A DNA stretch of 63,316 nucleotides, the filler included, from Octopus bimaculoides (taxonomy: Eukaryota), in the NCBI RefSeq assembly GCF_001194135.2. It is 6 parts of 6 records of this genome, joined end to end, with 100 filler letters (N's around TTAATTAATTAA, not from the genome) between each part and the next. Parts side by side here need not be neighbours in the genome. Positions count along the whole stretch, not along the records: positions 29,882 to 49,155 come from NW_026306484.1; 5 more parts are not named here. One strand, given 5' to 3'. Positions 37,870 through 47,846 of this stretch are shown here, piece by piece. A program made the position numbers and the translations under genes. The number at the start of each line of letters is the position of its first letter. Positions within the stretch are counted from its first letter, which is position 1. The notes under the pieces are model-generated. The model was not told the origin of the DNA, did no database searches, and saw only the letters and a list, made by a program, of their open reading frames with translations.

Positions 37870-37995
37870 GGAGTTGTAGCAGTCCTTTTCATAATCCTCT
37901 CTGTCAAATTCGAATGGCGTCCTTACATTTGGATCAGGACCCGTGTCATCAAGTGGCAATCTCATAAGAAATACCAGAATCCACCACAGGCATAA
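37870..37995 (+). CDS. TM + cytoplasmic-tail terminal exon, copy 1 (5' end in gap)
   Basis: GVVAVLFIILSVKFEWRPYIWIRTRVIKWQSHKKYQNPPQA*: hydrophobic run, then basic tail, then TAA. Confidence 0.65.
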   Translation, partial: GVVAVLFIILSVKFEWRPYIWIRTRVIKWQSHKKYQNPPQA

Positions 37996-38074
37996 GAATG
38001 CTATGTTTTGCGCTTTTTTTCTTGTTTTTCTGAGATAAATATTGAATGTATTTCTTTAAATCATATATAACCAG

Positions 38075-38237
38075 AATACTCATCTCTGCCATAGTCCTCA
38101 TTTCCATACTCGGCCTTCTAGTCATCCTTTTCATAGCCTTTTCTGTCAAATTCGAATGGCGTCCTTACGTTTGGATTAAGACCCGTGTCATCGAGTGGCA
38201 ATCTCAGGAGGAATACAAGAATCTACCAGAGGCATAA
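38075..38237 (+). CDS. TM + cytoplasmic-tail terminal exon, copy 2
   Basis: Acceptor ATATAACCAG|A (phase 2); ILISAIVLISILGLLVILFIAFSV (24-aa TM) then KFEWRPYVWIKTRVIEWQSQEEYKNLPEA*. Confidence 0.65.
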
Positions 38238-38274
38238 GAATGCTATATTTTGTGATATTTTGTGTAAATTATAT

Positions 38275-38463
38275 ATATCCATCTCTGCCATTGTCATTCC
38301 TTCCATTATTGTCCTTTTCATAATCCTCTCTGTCATATTCAGATGCCATCCTTACATTTGGATCAAGACCCGTGACATCCAGTGGAAATCTCATAAGAAA
38401 TACCAGAATCCACCACAGGCAGAAGAATGCTATGTTTTGTGCTTTTTTTCTTGCTTTTCTTAA
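38275..38463 (+). pseudogene. TM + tail copy 3 (acceptor AG deleted, stop read through)
   Basis: ISISAIVIPSIIVLFIILSVIFRCHPYIWIKTRDIQWKSHKKYQNPPQAEEC...; the CCAG acceptor of copies 2 and 4 is missing. Confidence 0.6.
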
Positions 38464-38506
38464 AGGAGAAATATTGAATGTATTTATTAAAATAATATAT
38501 ATCCAG

Positions 38507-38648
38507 CATACCCATCTCTGCCATAGTCCTCCTTTTCATAATCCTCCCTGTAATATTCAGATGCCATCCTTACATTTGGATCAAGACCCGTGACATCCAG
38601 TGGAAATCTCACAAGAAATACCAGAATCCACCATGCTATGTTTTCTGA
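38507..38648 (+). CDS. TM + tail copy 4 (shortened TM)
   Basis: Acceptor ATATATCCAG|C (phase 2); IPISAIVLLFIILPVIFRCHPYIWIKTRDIQWKSHKKYQNPPCYVF*. Confidence 0.45.
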
Positions 38649-41600
38649 TTTTTGTTTTTCTTACAGGAGAAAAATGTTAAAATTTTAAAAAAATTATATA
38701 TTGTAATAAACTTTTTCTAACAACAATATATCCTTATGGGTTTTTGTTGAAGCCTCGTTCTTATTCTATTGATCTCTTTTGCAAAACTGCTAGGTTACAG
38801 GGACTTAAACACAACCCTCTCCATACACACGTATATCTGTGATTATAATTTGATGCATGCAGCATGACACATACTAACCGCCCAGAAGAAATACCTGGGG
38901 CATATCTACGCATGAATGATATTCAGTGTTTCACAAGTGTTTTAGCTTTACTTGGAAAATGCAAAATGAATCATCGTAAAAACACTTATAGAAAACTTTT
39001 AATTTCCATAAATCCTTTATTATACATAAGCCATTTAAAATAAAACACAAAAACCATTAGATTCACTTCAACATGTTTTTTCCTTCGGTTGAATAATAAC
39101 ATCTGCGCACAAGTGTATGAGTGGTTTAGACATTTCCAAGATGACTGAAAAATGGTAAGAGTGATGAATATTCTGGGAGACTTACAACCAACAGAACTGA
39201 GAAGAACATCGCAGAAGTGTATGCAGAAGGAAAATAAATAAATAAATAAAAACAAAAAGATGGTAGAATTTCGTTTATAAAATTTTATTTTGGTTTCTGT
39301 AAATTCCATCATGAAATTCGAACCTCTGTCCTGATGTTTGGAACTGTCAGAGATACATTTCCATAAAGTATACGCCATACATCCCCCCCAAAAAACAATG
39401 TATGTATAGCAATAAGAGCATGCAGAATATTGAAAGAATGTGTGTGTGTATTACGCACACATACACACAGAAAAGTGGGGCTAAACTTAGGGGTTTCTAG
39501 TTTGGAGGGCTGTTACACATGTACACTCATGCAACAGTTGATCCTGTCCCCTTTCATCACCCTCGGACTTCTCTACTGGACTTTCTACACTCCAGCCTAT
39601 GGATTACACTGGACTCTTTTGAATTTGAGATTTTTTGAAAATTCTTTTTTCCAGAATCGGAATCTCCATAGCCTAAAACGTGGGATTCCGTTTAAAAAAA
39701 AAAGGGAAGGGGGAAGATTGCATATGCTCCATCTGGACCAAGACCAGACAAATACAGACAAGGGGGGGGGGGTAATTGTATTCATTCATTTATGAATTAT
39801 TTGCATTTCTAGCTTGAGATTATGAAGAAACTTGAGGAATGTGGCTTCAGTTACATCAAATTTCTTCATAGAAAATCCAGAAAAAAGGAAAAAGAAAAAA
39901 GAAGCTCTTTGTGTTGGCTACGAAATATGCAATAATATCACAAACATTGCTAAAGGTGTCATTGAAAATGTTATAAACCTAACAAGGCATTCAGAGACAA
40001 GGAAGTTGTTCTGCTTTATGTTTGTCACAAATCTTTACACAAGACAATCCAAATTGAAAAAAAAAAGGGCTGTTCTATTGTAAGTGTGACCCATTTTAGA
40101 AAATTTTCTTCGGGACAATTTTGGTTTCCTTCCATTTCTAGCATCTTGTGCTTGTAAAGAAATGGGGGTTGATAAGATTGCATGTTGATGCTGTGAAAAA
40201 ATGTTTTAGGAAACCATTAAATGACTTGCAAAGCAAAAACAGAAGTGAAATATACACAAGCAACAAGCGGCAAGTGTGCTTCTATCATCCATGAATTATT
40301 TACATCTGCAGTTTGATAAGACTATGAAGAAAACTGCGGAAGAAGACTCTCTAATTATATCAAAAGATTTATCCAAAGAAATCCAGATAAAAGTAAAGCG
40401 TTCTGTGTATTGGCTTCTCAAAGTTGGTTAACAACATTGAGAAAAATGAAGGAAACATTGAAAATATCGCAAAATCTATCCAAAACCATCCAGAGATGCT
40501 CTTCGTATTGGATGCCAAATATTTTGTAGTAATGATATCAAGGAAATCGAGGTACGTGATATTGAAGATATCACAGATGGAATAAAAACACAACCAGATG
40601 CAGAAAGTTTTTCTGCTAAAGCGACGCAAAATGTGACCGTGTCACAGGTCAACGAAACGATGCCACAAAACTTTAGACAAAACAATTCAAAGAATCTAAG
40701 TGATTCTGTTCAAATGCGATTCATTATACAATCTCTTTGTCAGATTATTTTAGCTTCCTTCTATTTCTAAGCACGGTTTAGTTCGATGCTTAGGAGACAT
40801 GGAACTAAACCATCAAATGCTTTGCAAAAAGAAAAAGAGAAGTGAAATATAGACAAGCAACAACTGGTGAGTGTGATTCTATTGTTTATCACTTAAGAGA
40901 GCTTTAATTATATAAAAGAATTTCTCCCAAAATATCCAGATAAAATAAGTTATTCTTTGTATTGGCTGCTAAATATACAACAATACTGTCCCAAAATTCA
41001 GAAATGCCTTAAAGAGTAACATCCGAACAATTCTGTCCTGGTGCAGACATTAAGTCGCCTTGGACAATACAAATGGAACGCATCTCCTTAGACCCACATT
41101 CAGTACTTCTTGACCGATGCTTCATTTTTGACAGACTTACAACAATTTTGTTGGCATTGTTATAACACAATGCTTTCACGAATTTCATAATATGCATTAG
41201 TATCAACTTGTTTAATCTACCAAGCAACCATATGCACAAGTCCATTAGGGACAAAAAAAGAAAAAAAAGTGAAGGAAACATTGTAAATATCGCAAAATTT
41301 AGCCAAAAACATCCAAATGGATAGAAGATGCTCTTTGTATCGATTGCCACGTATTCAGGAGAAATGGCATCAAGGAAATCAAAGAACGTGACATTGAAGA
41401 TGTCACAAACGGAATAAAAACACATCCAGAAGCATTAAGTTGTTCTGCTTTTAGAGCGTTGCAAAGTGTGACCGTGTCGCAGGTCAACGAAGTGATGCCA
41501 CAAAACTTTATACAAGACAATCGGAACAAAATAAGTTAGGGTCAATTTTAAATGCGAACCATTTTGGAAGTTTATTTTCTTCAATTTTTGCAGACTATAT

Positions 41601-41663
41601 TAGTTTCCTACTAATTTCTAGCAGATTTCATTGTAAAGAAATGCAGGTTGATAAGATTAATGT

Positions 41664-41925
41664 GAAAAGTGTTTTGGACGACAAGATGTTGTAGAAATTG
41701 ACGAATCTAAGTTTATGCATCGGAAGTGTCACTGTGGATCAAACGCAGTAGCCTGAAATGCATTTTAGCTCCTGTGCAAGACAGGAGTGCAGCAACATTG
41801 TTGCCCATCATTTCCAGCCATATTTTGCTGGGAACTAAGACCCTTATAGACTAATGTGGTGAGTTTTGTCCATCTCAACAATGCCTCAATCCACGCAAAC
41901 ACCGTGGAGGGGATGTAGAGTCATG
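41664..41925 (+). mobile_element. Merlin (IS1016/ISXO2-like) transposase remnant 1
   Basis: FGRQDVVEIDESKFMHRK, VQDRSAATLLPII..HIL.GT..ID, HANTVEGM*SHVK: the Merlin DDE motifs in order. Confidence 0.85.
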
Positions 41926-41956
41926 TGAAAGCAAATTATCAGAAAAGTGTTGTTGT

Positions 41957-42190
41957 GAAAAATGTGTTGGAGGGCAAGACATAGAAATAGATGAATCCAG
42001 ATTGAACTGCTGGCACATTATCTATAACCAACAGACATGTGCTGCCATGGACTACAATTCTAACAGACAGCTTGCAGACTTATAATCTTCCCCATCATTG
42101 CAGTATGAACCTCGGACCGAGTTCTGTCGAGCCCAATGGTACCACAATCCACACGAATACGGTTGAAGGAATTCCGAGTCACATAAACGG
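41957..42190 (+). mobile_element. Merlin transposase remnant 2
   Basis: VGGQDIEIDESR, HVLPWTTILTD..TYN, HTNTVEG..SHI. Confidence 0.8.
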
Positions 42191-43097
42191 TTAAATATTG
42201 CAATAGGCATGGTACCTCTGATACGTTGTTTTCTACAGATTTACAAGAATTTTATTGGCAATATTACAACAGGTATACCTTTATGAACTTCATAAACTGC
42301 CTTAAACCTGTTTAATGTACCAGTTACGAGAATAATATAGTTGGAGACACACCGCAATCATCTTTTACTTTATGTTGTAGTTTACAATAGTTTATGAGGT
42401 TTTTAAAAACTGTTTTACTGCCTTTTATTGGCACATTTCATTCAAAAGACAAAGAGTGAAATATAGACCAGCAACAACCGGTGAGTGTGGTTCTATTCTT
42501 TATGTATTTGAATAAGATTATAAAGAAAATTAAGCAAGGTGACTTAAAATATGAGAAAATTTTGAACGAAACTAATGAAACTAAACCATGAAATGCTTTG
42601 TAAAGAGAAGTGAAATATAGACCAGCAACAACTGGGGTGTGTGGTAGCATTCCTTCCCGTTTATGAATTTCTCCTGTATAAAATTTGATAAGATAGATAG
42701 AAAATTGAGGAAGATGTCTTGAAATATATGATGAGATTTCTCAGAGAAAATCTGAGATAGAAATACGTTCTTAAAAGAAGTCGTTTGTATTGGCTGCACA
42801 AATAAAATTACGGAAATCAAAATGCATGACATTGAAGATGTCATCAAACGAAATAAAAAAACTTCCAGAAACAGTAAGTTGTTCTGCTTTAGAGTGTCAG
42901 AAAATGTGACCGTGTCACAGTTCCAGGAAATGATGCCACAAAACTTTATACAAGACAATCCAAACAATCAAAGTGGGTCTGTTTTAAGTGCGACCCATTA
43001 TAAATGCCTTTTTGTCGGACTATTTTAGTTACCTTCTATTTCTAGCAGATTTCTTTGCAAAGAAATGCAGGTTGCTAAGATTACAAAAATTGGATAA

Positions 43098-43190
43098 CAA
43101 AATGTAGAAACTGATGAATCCAAGTTTATGCACAGGAAGTACCACCACAGTTGTTATCGACAAGGCCGCTGGATTCTTCAAATAATACAA
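43098..43190 (+). mobile_element. Merlin transposase remnant 3
   Basis: QNVETDESKFMHRKYHHSCYRQGRWILQII. Confidence 0.8.
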
Positions 43191-44379
43191 CAATATAAAT
43201 TGTTCTGTTTTAAGTGTGGCCCATCATATAAGATTTTCTTCAGACTATTTTAGTTTCCTACTATTTCTAGCATCTTCCATTGCAAAGAAAAGCTAGGTTG
43301 ATAAGACTACAGATTGTTTTAGGGGACACAGAAGGAAGCTATTAAACTCCTTGCAAAATGAAACAGAAGTGAAATATAAACAAGGAACAACTGGCAAGTG
43401 TGTTTTTAATCTATCATTTATGAATCCTTCACGTCTGTAGTTTGATAAAATTATACAGAAAACCGAGGAAGGGCACTTTATTCATGTCAAAAGATTTATC
43501 AAAATATTCTCCATATTGGCTTCTAAACGCTAAGCAACAACAGTATCACAAAAAGTCAAGATGATATTGAACATGTTCCAAAATTTATTTAAAAACATCT
43601 AGATAAAACTATTGTTACCCCAGTGGTAACCAAATGGCTGTAAAATAAACTTTATAAAAAAAGTAACTGGAAAACACATCACCACGACGGATTCGCTGGA
43701 GGTCAAATTTAAGGCTGACCCCCTCCGGAAGTAACCAACGAAACAAAAAGGAGGACAGTGGTTTATAGAACACTGTCCACAACCAGTAAAAAGATTGAGG
43801 TAGGAAATAAGGAGTGTGTGCAATGTTCTACACTCGAAGCACTAAATCACTCCACTGAGGAAGATGAAATTACGAATCAAATCAAAAGCCAAAAGCACTT
43901 AATCTTATTCTTATAATGGAGATCCTATCAGGACCGTCTCCAGATGGCATGGCTCCTTATGAAGCTCACAAATGAGAGTTTATCAAACATGTCTCAAAGT
44001 CCCATCAAATAAAACCAGGAGATGAGAGCAGAGCAAGAAGTCTGAAGTTTGTCATTGAAATATGAAGACAAGGAAATCATGAACTAAATCTAGAGCCAAA
44101 AACACTGTTATTCTTATTGTTCTTGTAGCTGATAATGGGTCCATCAGACTCGAATCAAAAGAGATGACTGAGATAACATAAAACAAGTTAAGAAGATCGA
44201 CAGAGGAAAAAAAAAAAATTGTGTGCCTGCTTCCATGCATCTCACAGAGATATGCAACCATCAAGACTGATTCTTGGTGGTGGGTTTTTTTCTTTGGGGG
44301 GGTGTCACTTGTCTATCCAACTGGATGCCTCCACAGGGCCAGTTCTGCAGCCCCACACTGAAGGTGCTGTAAATAAACA

Positions 44380-44603
44380 AACTGTACTCGGAGGCCCTGG
44401 TCGGACAAAAGAAGAATCTCAACAGAATGGATTGGCAAACCTGAACTGCCGAGTGTTACAACCACACCATCACCGCAACCACCAAAAGTTTTACTTCAGT
44501 ATGGACCCAACAGGAAAATGTCTCGTTAGGTACAACAATTTTTACTGATAAATGAGCCAGTTACAAGGGCCTTCACCAACTTGGCTCCTGCATTCACCAA
44601 ACA
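44380..44603 (+). mobile_element. Merlin transposase remnant 4, internally deleted/scrambled
   Basis: VLGGPGRTKEES, NGLANL..HHRNH..F.MDPTG, then QENVSLGTTIFTDK*ASYKGL. Confidence 0.7.
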
Positions 44604-44751
44604 GCGGAGAATGCACCAGCCGTATTTAGGCCAAGTCATCTCGTAAAAACATTAATTGATGAAATTATTCACAATGCCGACAGCTCCATAAAGTACCAAT
44701 CTCTCAAAGTGGAAGACCTAGGGCCGAGACTTCTGGTGCCTGGCTGTACTC

Positions 44752-45190
44752 AATTAGAACAGGCTAAAGAAATGTCCTTTGATGGAAGCAAAAAAGAGGG
44801 ACATACAGCTTTAGATTTGACGCCAATGAAGAAATTCTTTTTGTAAAATGGTTTGATAATACATGCGTCACTATTGGAACTAATTATGATACAGTGGAAC
44901 CTCTTCAAAAAGTGCAACGTTGGCTGAAGAAATGCAAAGCAAAGGATCCAGTTTCTCAACCTCATGTGTTCAAAAATTACAGCGCACATAGGGGAGGTGT
45001 CGATAAGCATGATTGGTGGATCAGCAAATACGCCACAAGAATCAGAGCTAAAAAGTGGTATTGGCCTATCATCATTCGAATCGTGGAATATGGCAGTTGT
45101 GAATGCCCATATATATAACTTGATAAATAGCAACAATGAAAAACCAGCCACCAAAATCGATTTGCTTTTAGGAAGACATTCGGCAGGCAA
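44752..45190 (+). mobile_element. piggyBac (PGBD-like) transposase C-terminal remnant
   Basis: KRGTYSFRFDANEEILFVKWFDNTCVTIGTNYDTVEPLQKVQRW...QPHVFKNYSAHRGGVDKHD..ISKY..RIRAKKWYWPI, including the YNxxMGGVDxxD third catalytic Asp motif; stops present. Confidence 0.88.
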
Positions 45191-45611
45191 ATCATTAATC
45201 TGCAATACTGACCTGAAGTAGTTCTTGATCAGGTAATTAACTAATTGACATAATTTATATATATATATTTTTTTTATATTCGAGTTAATTTATATTTCCA
45301 GAAACAGCTTTCCAAAACCATCAAAAAAGATTACCTCATCACCCGAAATGCACGTCTTCTCACTAAACTGGAAACCTAGACTCACTTACCATCGAAGAAT
45401 ACATTGGATTTATTAAGGAACTACACACAAATCCCATAGGATAATCTCCCCCACCACCACCACCACCACCGTCAGTCCTGGATACTACCAAACATGCTCG
45501 AAGTCCACGATCACACGGAGCCCTGCAACCCAAGAGCCCCAAACTTTAACCTTAACAGTTAACACTGGACCTTCTGCTATCAAGAACTGACAAACTCAAT
45601 TATTTTCTAAC

Positions 45612-45689
45612 GGCGCTGTGCCTAAGACTCAAATATTTTATAACAATTCTGGCGCTGTGCCTAAGACTCAAATATTTTATAACAATTCT
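45612..45689. repeat. Exact 39-bp tandem duplication
   Basis: GGCGCTGTGCCTAAGACTCAAATATTTTATAACAATTCT twice. Confidence 0.9.
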
Positions 45690-45906
45690 GTGTGCTGTCG
45701 TTGTTGAAAGATGTTGCTGTCTTTCTCAATACGTAACTGAATCGTACGGGCCTGTTTGTTCTATTTGCTGTTTCCTTTGTCTAACCATAACAAAATATAC
45801 ACACACACACATACATGGAGAAACAAGCACTGGTACACTTTGAGGGGAGGAAATATCAACTCTTTCATTAGCATATTTCTGTTGAAATACATTGTCACAG
45901 TTTCAA

Positions 45907-45942
<36 letters not shown>

Positions 45943-46495
45943 TAATTGTGAAAAATAATTTTGTCATCATTAAGCTGGCATACTTAACAAATTAATGTGA
46001 AATTTTGGGTAATTTAACAAAAAACCAAAAAACCAAAAAACAACAACAAAAACTGCAACAATGGATTTGTCTCGTAAACCAAAGGTAGGTCTTTGGAAGG
46101 GGACGTAGGTATCAAAATTAATTAAACCAAACATGGGCACCAAACCGTTAATTAATGGAGTTAACATTTTCATTAATCACTTAACTTTGGAAATCATTGT
46201 TGGACTAATCAACCTTCGTTACATTTAACATTCGTTAATTGAAATCAAATTGAATTTACTACTATTAACTTTAATTACAGTTAATGGATTTTAATAGTTT
46301 TGGCACTTTTTTTAAAGGTGTTTTTAGGTGGGTTTTTTTTTTTGAGCAAAAACTTANNNNNNNNNNATGACAAGAATATAATAAAAAATAATGACTTTTC
46401 TTTTAATTTGCCACACCAATGCGAAGGACAGTGGGACCAACAGAAAGTGTTAGGGTTTACATATAATGAAATGAGGAAAAAAAAAATTATATATA

Positions 46496-46930
46496 GGCGT
46501 GGCAGTGTGGTACCAAGTTTGCCTCCCAACCACATGATTCCAGGTTCAGTCCCACTGCCATGGCACCTTGGGCAAGTGTCTTCTACTATAGCCTCGGGCT
46601 GATCAAAGCCTTGTTAGGACTTATTCTTTGTAAGCCTAGTACTTATTCTATCGGTCTCTTTTTGCCGACCTGCTAAGTTACGGGGACGTAAACACACCAT
46701 TGGTTGTCAAGCGATGTTGTGGGGGACAAACGCAGTCACACAAACATATACACACACATACATACATATATACACATATATACGACGGGCTTCTTTCAGT
46801 TTCCATCTACCAAATCCACTTACAAGNNNNNNNNNNCGGGCTTCTTTCAGTTTCCATCTACCAAATCCACTTACAAGGCTTTGGTCAACCTGAGGCTTTA
46901 GTAGAAGACACTTGCCCAAGGTGCCACGCA
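46496..46930. mobile_element. Two OR/CORE-like SINE pieces fused in opposite orientation
   Basis: + strand head 46496-46615 (GGCACCTTGGGCAAGTGTCTT) followed by a minus-strand copy ending in ACACTTGCCCAAGGTGCCACGCA at 46930. Confidence 0.8.
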
Positions 46931-47043
46931 AAAAAATTAAAAGTAATTCAATGTTTTCTTGAAACAATAAATTTCTATAGAAATTAGGATTTATAAAAAG
47001 TTTCCGTTCTACAATATTCTCAAAGGAATGAAATATTATCCAG

Positions 47044-47165
47044 CAACTCGAGCTAATACAAACGAGCCCGGTTGGTTTAAAAGATTAACTGGCATCTCCT
47101 TGTCAGGAATACAGGCAACCGTCAGATCACAGAGGTCTATGGTGCACTCCACTGTCGTTATTTAA
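47044..47165 (+). CDS. Candidate phase-1 terminal exon
   Basis: ATTATCCAG|CA acceptor; TRANTNEPGWFKRLTGISLSGIQATVRSQRSMVHSTVVI*; AATAAA at 47206-47211. The antisense frame is also open and the acceptor is weak. Confidence 0.3.
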
Positions 47166-47596
47166 TTACTGTATTCTGTGTTAAATTCAAATTACGACAA
47201 ACGTAAATAAACAAACGAAGTTTGCTTTTAGAAGTGTTGAGATGTCTTTTAGAAAGTTAAAGAAGTGATTTTAAATTCTCAATCGCAGAATAATGCTAAT
47301 AATATAGCCTGAACAGGATAAACTACCCCTATTTTGCAGAGAAAAGTGTAGGTGGCTGGAGAAGGGAAGAGAACTAGATATAGAAAAAATAAGCAATTCG
47401 GGAGCTAGAAATATTGGAGAAAAATGTGAAATTCTTCAAGCAGGTATCTGTCTTATGCAAAACCAATAGAAGCCCCAAGTGATACCAAAAACCTGGAATG
47501 CCTTCTGAGATAGATAAATACACACACATATGTATATATAGAAATGTGTAGTACATACTTAGAATTAAGTTGTTCAAACCATCCCTTCTCTTTTTA

Positions 47597-47846
47597 CTCT
47601 CTTTTACTTGTTTCAGTCTTTTGACTGCGGCCATGCTGGAGCACCGCCTTTAGTCGAGCAAATCGACCCCAGGACTTATCCTTTTGTAAAGCCTAGTACT
47701 TATTCTAACGGTCTCTTTTGCCGAACCACTAAGTTATGGGGACCTAAACACACCACCAACGGTTGTCAAGCGATGTTGGGGGACAAACACAAACACACAA
47801 ACATATACATATATACGACAGGCTTCTTTCAGTTTCCGTCTACCAC
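47597..47846 (-). mobile_element. Octopus SINE (OR/CORE-like), cut by gap
   Basis: GACTGCGGCCATGCTGGAGCACCGCCTTTAGTCGAGCAAATCGACCCCAGGACTTA...TTCAGTTTCCGTCTACC. Confidence 0.85.

What the first reader, a model, noticed from the sequence alone, without database searches (positions are those of the whole stretch)
37870..38648. Four tandem copies of a TM + cytoplasmic-tail terminal exon: possible swappable signalling tails
Seen: a unit of about 190-240 bp is repeated four times 1.5 kb downstream of Ig exon 2. On the + strand every copy stays open from a hydrophobic run into a short tail and a stop. Copies 2 and 4 keep a CCAG acceptor, copy 3 has lost it, and copy 1 starts in a gap. All four keep Y-x-N (YQNP or YKNL) and P-Y-(I/V)-W-I. 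Established: pY-x-N is the Grb2 SH2 consensus and YxxL/I are sorting or SH2 motifs. Inference: alternative last exons could give one ectodomain different tails. Caveat: the acceptors are phase 2 while Ig exon 2 ends in phase 1, so a stalk exon must exist, probably in the 37352-37869 gap.
Basis: partly seen in the sequence, partly recalled or inferred. Interest (0 to 1): 0.75.

Follow-up and report, generated by a model that had tools for sequence, protein, structure and literature searches.

The report
Octopus membrane-anchor exon with three partial duplicates
The last exon (membrane anchor plus short tail) of an octopus-only immunoglobulin-like surface protein gene is followed by three partial tandem copies of itself. 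These copies look like decaying duplicates rather than a set of swappable signalling tails.

Summary
Four homologous units (spacing 242/187/218 bp) lie at 37870-38701, and each is open from a hydrophobic run to a stop.

The window is Octopus bimaculoides scaffold LGKD02011600.1, gene LOC106871836. This gene belongs to an Octopus-restricted family with predicted Ig-like domains.

In O. vulgaris the orthologous last Ig exon splices in phase 1 directly into one stalk+TM+tail exon. Synteny places the acceptor and stalk of copy 1 inside the 518-N gap, so no separate stalk exon is needed.

Copies 2-4 start at the last stalk codons and end about 80 nt after the stop. Copy 3 has lost its stop and every usable AG. 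Copy 4 has a 27-nt TM deletion and an 11-nt deletion at the stop. dN/dS is about 1 or higher. The only AATAAA follows copy 4.

Most likely copy 1 is the terminal exon and copies 2-4 are untranslated duplicates.

One caveat remains. A superseded RefSeq model joined the Ig exon to an in-frame AG inside copy 2. O. vulgaris and O. sinensis have their own duplications of this exon, and annotated isoforms there use the second copy.

The parts
33258..33513 (+). Ig-like domain exon A of LOC106871836. The 5' end is approximate. The donor is A|GTAAGG, phase 1.
   Evidence: tblastn of P0001, P0002 and P0003; sequence read.
34603..34641 (+). Short linker exon encoding (N)LTIAENYKIFQN. Its acceptor is TTTTTCAG and it is phase 1 at both ends.
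   Evidence: present in P0003 and P0014.
36093..36341 (+). It ends ...GAG ATT AAA G|GTAAGG, phase 1.
   Evidence: AlphaFold2 model pLDDT 92.5. Foldseek best matches are titin/twitchin I-set domains, IgLON and antibody VL, with TM-scores (query-normalised) of about 0.6-0.75 among those listed. 86% identical to the O. vulgaris Ig3 exon region.
37352..37869 (.). Assembly gap of 518 N. By synteny it should hold the last ~266 bp of the intron, the native phase-1 acceptor, the stalk and the first TM codons of copy 1.
   Evidence: Window 36895-37351 matches L004 33101-33545 at 90%. The match resumes at window 37874 = L004 33871. The O. vulgaris acceptor lies at L004 33810/33811.
37870..37995 (+). Copy 1: the 3' part of the stalk+TM+tail terminal exon, with stop TAA at 37993-37995. 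It is the positional counterpart of the annotated O. vulgaris TM exon.
38070..38237 (+). Copy 2: a partial-exon duplicate with stop TAA at 38235-38237. An in-frame phase-1 AG at 38093-38094 (tcatctctgccatAG|TC) was used by the superseded model XP_014774040.1. Spliced there, it encodes VLISILGLLVILFIAFSVKFEW...NLPEA.
   Evidence: Kyte-Doolittle 19-residue maximum 2.69.
38275..38463 (+). Copy 3: a partial-exon duplicate. Both the CCAG and the CATAG are lost (CATTG). It has a 12-nt in-frame TM deletion, and the stop is mutated (TAA to GAA) so the frame runs 20 codons into the pyrimidine-rich flank.
   Evidence: No phase-1 AG gives the TM frame.
38502..38648 (+). Copy 4: a partial-exon duplicate with a 27-nt in-frame TM deletion and an 11-nt deletion that removes the original stop. 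The hydrophobic run is 17 residues with two prolines. The CATAG acceptor at 38525-38526 would leave only 11 hydrophobic residues.
37996..38069 (+). Spacer between copies 1 and 2. Similar spacers lie at 38238-38274 and 38464-38501. It is homologous to the ~80 nt 3' flank of the exon in O. vulgaris and O. sinensis, not to the acceptor or stalk.
   Evidence: alignment.
38705..38710 (+). The only canonical AATAAA near the array, 57 nt after the stop of copy 4. An ATTAAA lies at 38486-38491, after copy 3. Nothing follows copies 1 or 2.

Best explanation
The array is the 3' end of LOC106871836, an Octopus-restricted type I membrane protein gene with predicted Ig-like ectodomains.

Copy 1 is the genuine terminal exon, carrying stalk, TM helix and a cytoplasmic tail of about 28 residues. 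Its phase-1 acceptor and stalk are hidden in the 518-N gap. It is spliced directly to the Ig exon that ends at 36341.

Copies 2-4 arose in the O. bimaculoides lineage by tandem duplication of a short unit. The unit runs from the last ~5 stalk codons, through the TM, tail and stop, to about 80 nt of 3' flank. It excluded the native acceptor.

The copies therefore sit immediately behind the stop codon of copy 1. They are most likely transcribed only as 3' UTR up to the AATAAA at 38705, and they are drifting neutrally.

Shown: the repeat anatomy, the synteny, the breakpoints, the lesions and the lack of constraint. Inferred: that copy 1 is the exon in use, and that copies 2-4 are untranslated.
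For: 1. O. vulgaris proteins P0001 and P0011 join the last Ig exon to ADGSGTS-IPTYA...PYIW...YQLPPVEV. The genomic acceptor is TTTTGCAG|CT, phase 1, with the stalk in the same exon.
2. Synteny: the intron 36895-37351 is 90% identical to L004 33101-33545. The match resumes inside copy 1, and the missing 326 bp fit the 518-N gap. The downstream flank 38745-38918 matches the flank of the O. vulgaris exon.
3. The inter-copy spacers align to the exon's 3' flank in three species. Each unit begins at (A/T)CCAG(A/C)ATAC, which corresponds to the coding sequence ACC AGC ATC CC.
4. Lesions: c3 has lost its stop and all phase-1 AGs; c4 has 27-nt and 11-nt deletions.
5. Pairwise dN/dS is 0.86-4.1 in 13 of the 14 defined comparisons (c3-c4 0.23; c1-c3 undefined because there are no synonymous differences). 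Variable columns by codon position are 14/15/9. Under neutral simulation the chance that all four copies stay stop-free is about 0.17.
6. Poly(A) signals occur only after c3 (ATTAAA) and c4 (AATAAA).
7. The current RefSeq model XP_014774040.2 uses none of the copies.
8. O. bimaculoides copies mostly resemble one another more than O. vulgaris or O. sinensis copies (0.77-0.88 against 0.69-0.78), although c2 did not group cleanly with the others in the tree.
Against: - The superseded model XP_014774040.1 (P0014) spliced 36341 to 38095 inside copy 2, in frame, giving a good 18-residue TM.
- Both TM-region indels, -12 and -27 nt, are multiples of three.
- Some copies differ by up to 23%, which is more than the 10-14% interspecies divergence of flanking non-coding DNA. 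The copies are therefore either old or fast-evolving, yet they are still open.
- O. vulgaris and O. sinensis carry their own duplications of this exon. Isoforms P0012, P0013 and P0010 splice copy 1 into copy 2. O. vulgaris alternative forms were added by PASA from transcript data (PMC10700109).
- The 5' part of copy 1 is unseen.
Confidence: 0.6

Rival explanations
1. Alternative 3' splice-site choice within one repeated terminal exon. The Ig exon can be joined either to the acceptor of copy 1 or to the conserved CATAG|TC inside copy 2, and perhaps copy 4. This would give receptors with different TM helices and tails. It is the reader's idea in corrected form.
For: - XP_014774040.1 used exactly this junction.
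- The AG at 38094 follows a pyrimidine-rich tract (0.67), comparable to the real acceptor of exon B (0.72).
- The TM-region indels are in frame.
- Sister species use a second copy in annotated isoforms.
- O. vulgaris copy 2 is open in phase 1 from its native acceptor through a long SANGSG stalk, the TM and the tail.
- dN/dS above 1, and an exon more diverged than its intron, could mean diversifying selection.
Against: - The junction was dropped in the current RefSeq model. It may have been forced by the missing copy-1 acceptor in the gap.
- Copy 3 has no usable AG, and copy 4 would give only 11 hydrophobic residues.
- There is no sign of purifying selection.
- The annotated second-copy use in O. 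vulgaris and O. sinensis works differently. It needs a GT donor before the stop and the native acceptor of the next copy, and the O. bimaculoides copies have neither: GC instead of GT, and no acceptor.
Confidence: 0.2
2. The whole locus on this unplaced scaffold is a decaying or incomplete gene copy, so none of the four copies, including copy 1, makes a membrane protein.
For: - No signal-peptide exon was found within 9.9 kb upstream of exon A, by protein or DNA search.
- Both RefSeq models start at an internal Met.
- The scaffold is unplaced, gappy and rich in repeats and transposon remnants.
- Even c1 against the O. sinensis and O. vulgaris exons shows dN/dS above 1.
Against: - Exons A, B and the linker are intact, with good splice sites and conserved phases.
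- The Ig-like domain folds confidently.
- Copy 1 keeps the stop at the ancestral place.
- A short, fast-evolving leader exon is easily missed or could lie beyond the repeats.
Confidence: 0.12
3. The array is an assembly artefact: mis-joined reads or haplotypes in a short-read assembly next to a gap.
For: The array abuts a 518-N gap on an unplaced scaffold. The window is identical to GCA_001194135.2 LGKD02011600.1, with the same gaps.
Against: The copies differ by 5-23% and by several indels, each with its own junction sequence. Alleles or collapsed reads would not give four ordered, diverged units. Independent assemblies of two other species also show tandem copies of this exon.
Confidence: 0.04

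Closest known systems
Tandem exon duplication with alternative or mutually exclusive use, such as the two alternative transmembrane exons 17.1/17.2 of Drosophila Dscam1 (from general knowledge, not tested here)
   Same: Homologous TM-encoding exons lie in tandem behind Ig-domain exons. In O. vulgaris and O. sinensis the duplicates keep the native acceptor and are used in annotated isoforms.
   Different: In O. bimaculoides the unit is a partial exon without the native acceptor and without any donor. Every copy ends in a stop. There is no purifying selection on the copies, and no transcript evidence is available.
Pseudo-exons: partial exon duplicates left in introns or 3' UTRs
   Same: The unit boundaries fall inside the exon and in its 3' flank. 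The copies show lesions (stop loss, deletions), neutral-looking substitution, and a single downstream poly(A) signal.
   Different: The reading frames are still open, the TM indels are in frame, and copy 2 retains a usable in-frame AG that one gene model used.
O. vulgaris gene encoding CAI9744055-57 (P0013, P0012, P0001) and O. sinensis LOC118762047 (P0010)
   Same: The gene architecture is orthologous or paralogous: leader, Ig-like exons each preceded by a linker exon, then stalk+TM+tail exon(s) in tandem. The PYIW...W.S...Y..PP tail is shared.
   Different: The duplication units are 1.5-2.5 kb and include about 470 bp of intron and the acceptor. Copy 1 has a GT donor just before its stop (GAA|GTATAA). 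It is spliced into the next copy's stalk, read in another frame, which adds an ADQQMDQE-repeat tail. O. bimaculoides has 190-240-bp units, GC at that position and no acceptor.

Membership tests
Alternative or mutually exclusive tandem exons (Dscam exon 17 type) | Two or more homologous exons in tandem | tested here: met
   Four units.
Alternative or mutually exclusive tandem exons (Dscam exon 17 type) | Each copy carries its own native splice acceptor in the phase of the upstream exon | tested here: not met
   The units start inside the exon and the spacers are 3' flank. CCAG is phase 2 and aligns to coding sequence. Only cryptic in-frame AGs exist in c2 and c4, and none in c3.
Alternative or mutually exclusive tandem exons (Dscam exon 17 type) | Purifying selection on every copy | tested here: not met
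   dN/dS is 0.86-4.1 for almost all pairs, and there is no third-position excess (14/15/9). Only 35 codons were compared, so power is low.
Alternative or mutually exclusive tandem exons (Dscam exon 17 type) | Transcripts that include one copy or another | not testable with these tools
   Only gene models are available. XP_014774040.1 uses c2 and XP_014774040.2 uses none.
Alternative last exons, each with its own poly(A) site | A poly(A) signal downstream of each copy | tested here: not met
   AATAAA occurs only at 38705 and ATTAAA only at 38486. Nothing follows c1 or c2.
Immunoglobulin-superfamily type I membrane protein | Ig beta-sandwich ectodomain | tested here: met
   AlphaFold2 pLDDT 92.5. 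Foldseek PDB matches to I-set and V-set domains have probability 1.00 and TM-scores (query-normalised) mostly 0.6-0.75. The Pfam I-set score is below the cut-off, 22.8 against 23.7 bits, and the canonical B-F disulfide positions are not evident.
Immunoglobulin-superfamily type I membrane protein | Signal peptide and a single TM helix | tested here: inconclusive
   A TM is present. The leader is present in O. vulgaris (P0001) but not found on the O. bimaculoides scaffold.
Grb2-SH2 pY-x-N docking motif | Y-x-N conserved in the functional tail | tested here: not met
   All four O. bimaculoides copies and the O. sinensis copies have YQN or YKN. The annotated O. vulgaris proteins P0001 and P0011 have YQLPP. 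Only the Tyr and the PP are invariant. Phosphorylation is not testable here.

The most novel reading that the evidence does not exclude
The stalk+TM+tail exon of this Octopus-restricted Ig-like receptor family may be a recurrent duplication hot spot whose copies are actually used. In O. bimaculoides the route would be alternative 3' splice sites inside a repeated terminal exon (copy 1 against copy 2). In O. vulgaris and O. sinensis the route is splicing of copy 1 into the stalk of copy 2, read in a second frame (a dual-coding 27-nt repeat). The excess of non-synonymous change, and an exon more diverged than its introns, would then reflect diversifying selection on the membrane-proximal and cytoplasmic part of a surface receptor.
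Probability: 0.15. Interest if true: 0.6.

Novelty: new member of a known kind. Interest (0 to 1): 0.3.

Why it matters
If copies 2-4 are dead, this is an ordinary local duplication in a poorly assembled region. Its main value is a corrected gene model: the current RefSeq protein, which reads into an intron, should end in a TM exon whose 5' part lies in the gap.

If some copies are used, the case becomes more interesting. A lineage-restricted cephalopod surface receptor family would diversify its membrane anchor and tail by repeated exon duplication. That would be a small-scale parallel to Dscam-type TM exon choice, in an animal known for unusual transcript diversification. The O. vulgaris isoforms, which read one repeat in two frames, would deserve a look in their own right.

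Tried and rejected
- Tandem Repeats Finder missed the array because of indels. The repeat finder and nhmmer recovered it.
- I first took CTGAG|AT at 38034 and TTAAAG at 38466 to be decayed native acceptors followed by in-frame stops. The alignment with the 3' flanks of three species showed these stretches are duplicated 3' flank, not acceptor or stalk, so I dropped that reading.
- The O. vulgaris locus of the paralog P0004 (L001) has no TM-tail homolog.
- P0001 and P0011 could not be looked up by exact sequence. The longest isoform, P0013, gave the locus.
- Profile searches of 5.8 billion and 1.84 billion proteins with the tail found only Octopus proteins: P0009 (the window itself), P0010 and P0011. 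The module has no detectable relatives outside the genus.
- Pfam gave only sub-threshold I-set hits.
- Rfam and ARAGORN were negative for the whole piece.
- No paper mentions any of the LOC identifiers.
- A search for the signal-peptide exon on the scaffold failed.
- The short decayed third copy in O. vulgaris (L004 37180-37293) shares AGGCATAA...TGTG with the O. bimaculoides copies, but it aligned too poorly to settle the order of duplications.

Full report
**1. What is there**

The piece 29882-49155 is identical, gaps included, to the end of Octopus bimaculoides unplaced scaffold LGKD02011600.1 of assembly GCA_001194135.2.

Between 37870 and 38701 lie four homologous units. The repeat finder gives 150-nt copies at 37882, 38124, 38311 and 38529, with 81%, 92% and 69% ungapped identity to the first and spacing of 242/187/218 bp. 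A profile of the units finds only these four on the scaffold, at E 1e-62 to 1e-69.

Each unit is open on the + strand from a hydrophobic run through P-Y-(I/V)-W-I and Y-(Q/K)-N to a stop. Copy 1 is cut by the 518-N run 37352-37869.

**2. Which gene**

The upstream exons (about 33258-33513, 34603-34641 and 36093-36341) belong to LOC106871836. A search of 5.8 billion proteins found relatives only in Octopus (O. vulgaris, O. sinensis, O. bimaculoides), all uncharacterised.

Pfam gives only a sub-threshold I-set hit. An AlphaFold2 model of the 36093-36341 domain is confident (pLDDT 92.5). Its best PDB matches are titin and twitchin I-set domains, IgLON proteins and antibody VL domains (TM-score about 0.6-0.75). 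'Ig-like' is therefore justified as a predicted fold.

**3. How the TM exon is joined in relatives**

O. vulgaris P0001 and the paralog P0011 run ...LELK/ADGSGTS-IPTYAVV...PYIW...YQLPPVEV. That is, the last Ig exon joins directly to stalk+TM+tail.

In the O. vulgaris locus (L004) the Ig3 exon ends AAA G|GTAAGGAAATTACTTCTGC, just as in the window. The TM exon starts TTTTGCAG|CT GAT GGA..., phase 1, with the stalk in the same exon. So no separate stalk exon is needed.

**4. Where copy 1 stands**

Window 36895-37351 is 90% identical to L004 33101-33545. The match resumes at window 37874 = L004 33871. The 326 bp that are missing include the acceptor at L004 33810/33811 and fit the 518-N gap.

Window 38745-38918 matches the flank downstream of the O. 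vulgaris exon. Copy 1 is thus the positional counterpart of the annotated TM exon, and its acceptor and stalk should lie in the gap.

**5. What copies 2-4 are**

Alignment with O. vulgaris and O. sinensis shows two things. The spacers between copies are the roughly 80 nt 3' flank of the exon (AATGCTATGTTTT...ATTGAATG.ATT...ATATAT). Each following unit begins at (A/T)CCAG(A/C)ATAC..CATCTCTGCC, which corresponds to the coding sequence ACC AGC ATC CCC ACC (T-S-I-P-T) at the end of the stalk.

The duplicated unit is therefore a partial exon plus 3' flank.

The lesions are:
- Copy 3 lost CCAG and the CATAG (now CATTG). It has a 12-nt TM deletion and its stop is mutated.
- Copy 4 has a 27-nt TM deletion, leaving 17 hydrophobic residues with two prolines, and an 11-nt deletion at the stop.

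A scan of every AG for phase-1 compatibility finds the TM frame reachable only at 38095 in copy 2 (a good 18-residue TM) and at 38527 in copy 4 (only 11 hydrophobic residues). Copy 3 has no such site.

**6. Constraint**

The test used the 35 codons shared by the four copies and two O. sinensis copies.
- dN/dS is 0.86-4.1 for nearly every pair; c3-c4 is 0.23 from only 4 differences.
- Variable columns by codon position are 14/15/9.
- Neutral simulation gives about 0.17 for all four copies staying stop-free.

So nothing shows purifying selection, though power is low.

Two facts point weakly the other way. Both TM indels are multiples of three. The exon is also more diverged between species (78%) than the flanking intron (90%), and likewise within O. 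sinensis (87% against 97.7%). This could mean diversifying selection, array turnover or gene conversion.

**7. Ends**

AATAAA occurs only at 38705, after copy 4. An ATTAAA lies at 38486, after copy 3. Nothing follows copies 1 or 2. A copy-1 mRNA would therefore most simply carry copies 2-4 as 3' UTR.

**8.

The first RefSeq model of this gene, XP_014774040.1 (P0014), ends ...FTLEIK-VLISILGLLVILFIAFSVKFEWRPYVWIKTRVIEWQSQEEYKNLPEA. It maps to 36341->38095, an in-frame AG (tcatctctgccatAG|TC) inside copy 2. The current model XP_014774040.2 drops this junction and reads into the intron. With the copy-1 acceptor missing from the assembly, the old junction may have been forced.

The same exon is also duplicated in other species:
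- An O. sinensis contig has three full copies at a 2.46-kb period, plus a fourth fragment that keeps only the acceptor and first stalk codons.
- O. vulgaris has two copies 1.5 kb apart plus a decayed third.

Those units include the intron flank and the acceptor, and the O. bimaculoides copies mostly group apart from them (copy 2 is placed ambiguously), so they are probably separate events.

O. vulgaris isoforms P0012 and P0013, and O. sinensis P0010, use a GT donor just before the stop of copy 1 (GAA|GTATAA). They splice into the native acceptor of copy 2, whose 27-nt-repeat stalk is then read in another frame as an ADQQMDQE-repeat tail. That tail ends at the TAG where the TM of copy 2 would begin. 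In the O. vulgaris annotation, alternative forms were added by PASA from Iso-Seq and RNA-seq assemblies (PMC10700109).

O. bimaculoides copies have GC at that donor position and no native acceptor, so this route is not evidently open to them.

**9. Motifs**

P-Y-(I/V)-W, R, W, S, Y and PP are invariant across copies and species. Y-x-N is not: the annotated O. vulgaris proteins have YQLPP. The Grb2-type reading therefore rests on the less trustworthy copies.

**10. Verdict**

- Most likely (about 0.6): copy 1 is the terminal exon and copies 2-4 are lineage-specific partial duplicates drifting in the 3' region.
- About 0.2: copy 2, and perhaps copy 4, is used through an internal alternative 3' splice site.
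- About 0.12: the locus as a whole is a decaying copy. No leader exon was found within 9.9 kb upstream.
- About 0.04: assembly artefact. The rest is left to readings not listed here.

The finding is a real but fairly ordinary exon duplication. Its most interesting aspect is comparative: repeated duplication of the same exon in three Octopus genomes, and the two-frame use of the second copy in O. vulgaris and O. sinensis.

Noticed in passing
window 30933-31690: About 105 units of CCTAAC are followed after a 23-bp spacer by about 17 units of TAGGGA/TTAGGG. This is a head-to-head interstitial telomere-like array 1.6 kb upstream of Ig-like exon A.
   Followed up: no
window 36790-36900: A near-perfect inverted repeat (ggttagtagccctcgctcttaaccactacaccatatgcgc / gcgcagtggttaagagcgtaggctactaacc) lies in the intron. 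It looks tRNA/SINE-like, but ARAGORN and Rfam find nothing.
   Followed up: partly
window 40000-43500: A block of repeated units (65-83% identity, spaced 150-1600 bp apart) carries short ORFs on both strands. A syntenic repeat block exists in O. vulgaris (L004 40.3-45.4 kb). There is no Pfam match.
   Followed up: partly
window 44894-45118 (+): An ORF fragment matches the piggyBac-type transposase domain PF13843 (E 2e-5, 24.5 bits against a cut-off of 22.4).
   Followed up: no
L004 35343-35540 (O. vulgaris): The stalk of TM-exon copy 2 is an expanded 27-nt repeat that is open in all three frames. In the TM frame it encodes SANGSG repeats. In annotated isoforms P0012 and P0013 it is read as ADQQMDQE repeats, forming a cytoplasmic extension.
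   Followed up: partly
L003 1432-7746 (O. sinensis VCDQ01005367.1): The 2.46-kb units carrying the TM exon are 99% identical between units 2 and 3. Between units 1 and 2 the intron flank is 97.7% identical but the exon only 87%, so the exon is more diverged than its flank.
   Followed up: partly
window 29882-33257 and L002 1-6567: No counterpart of the O. vulgaris signal-peptide exon (L004 10001-10056) was found upstream of exon A. O. bimaculoides exon A matches both Ig1 and Ig2 of O. vulgaris at about 81%, so O. vulgaris has one more Ig exon.
   Followed up: partly
window 36342-36388: The current RefSeq protein XP_014774040.2 ends ...EIKGKEITSANNNNNNSF. It reads through the donor at 36341/36342 into the intron. 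This is probably an annotation artefact caused by the gap.
   Followed up: yes
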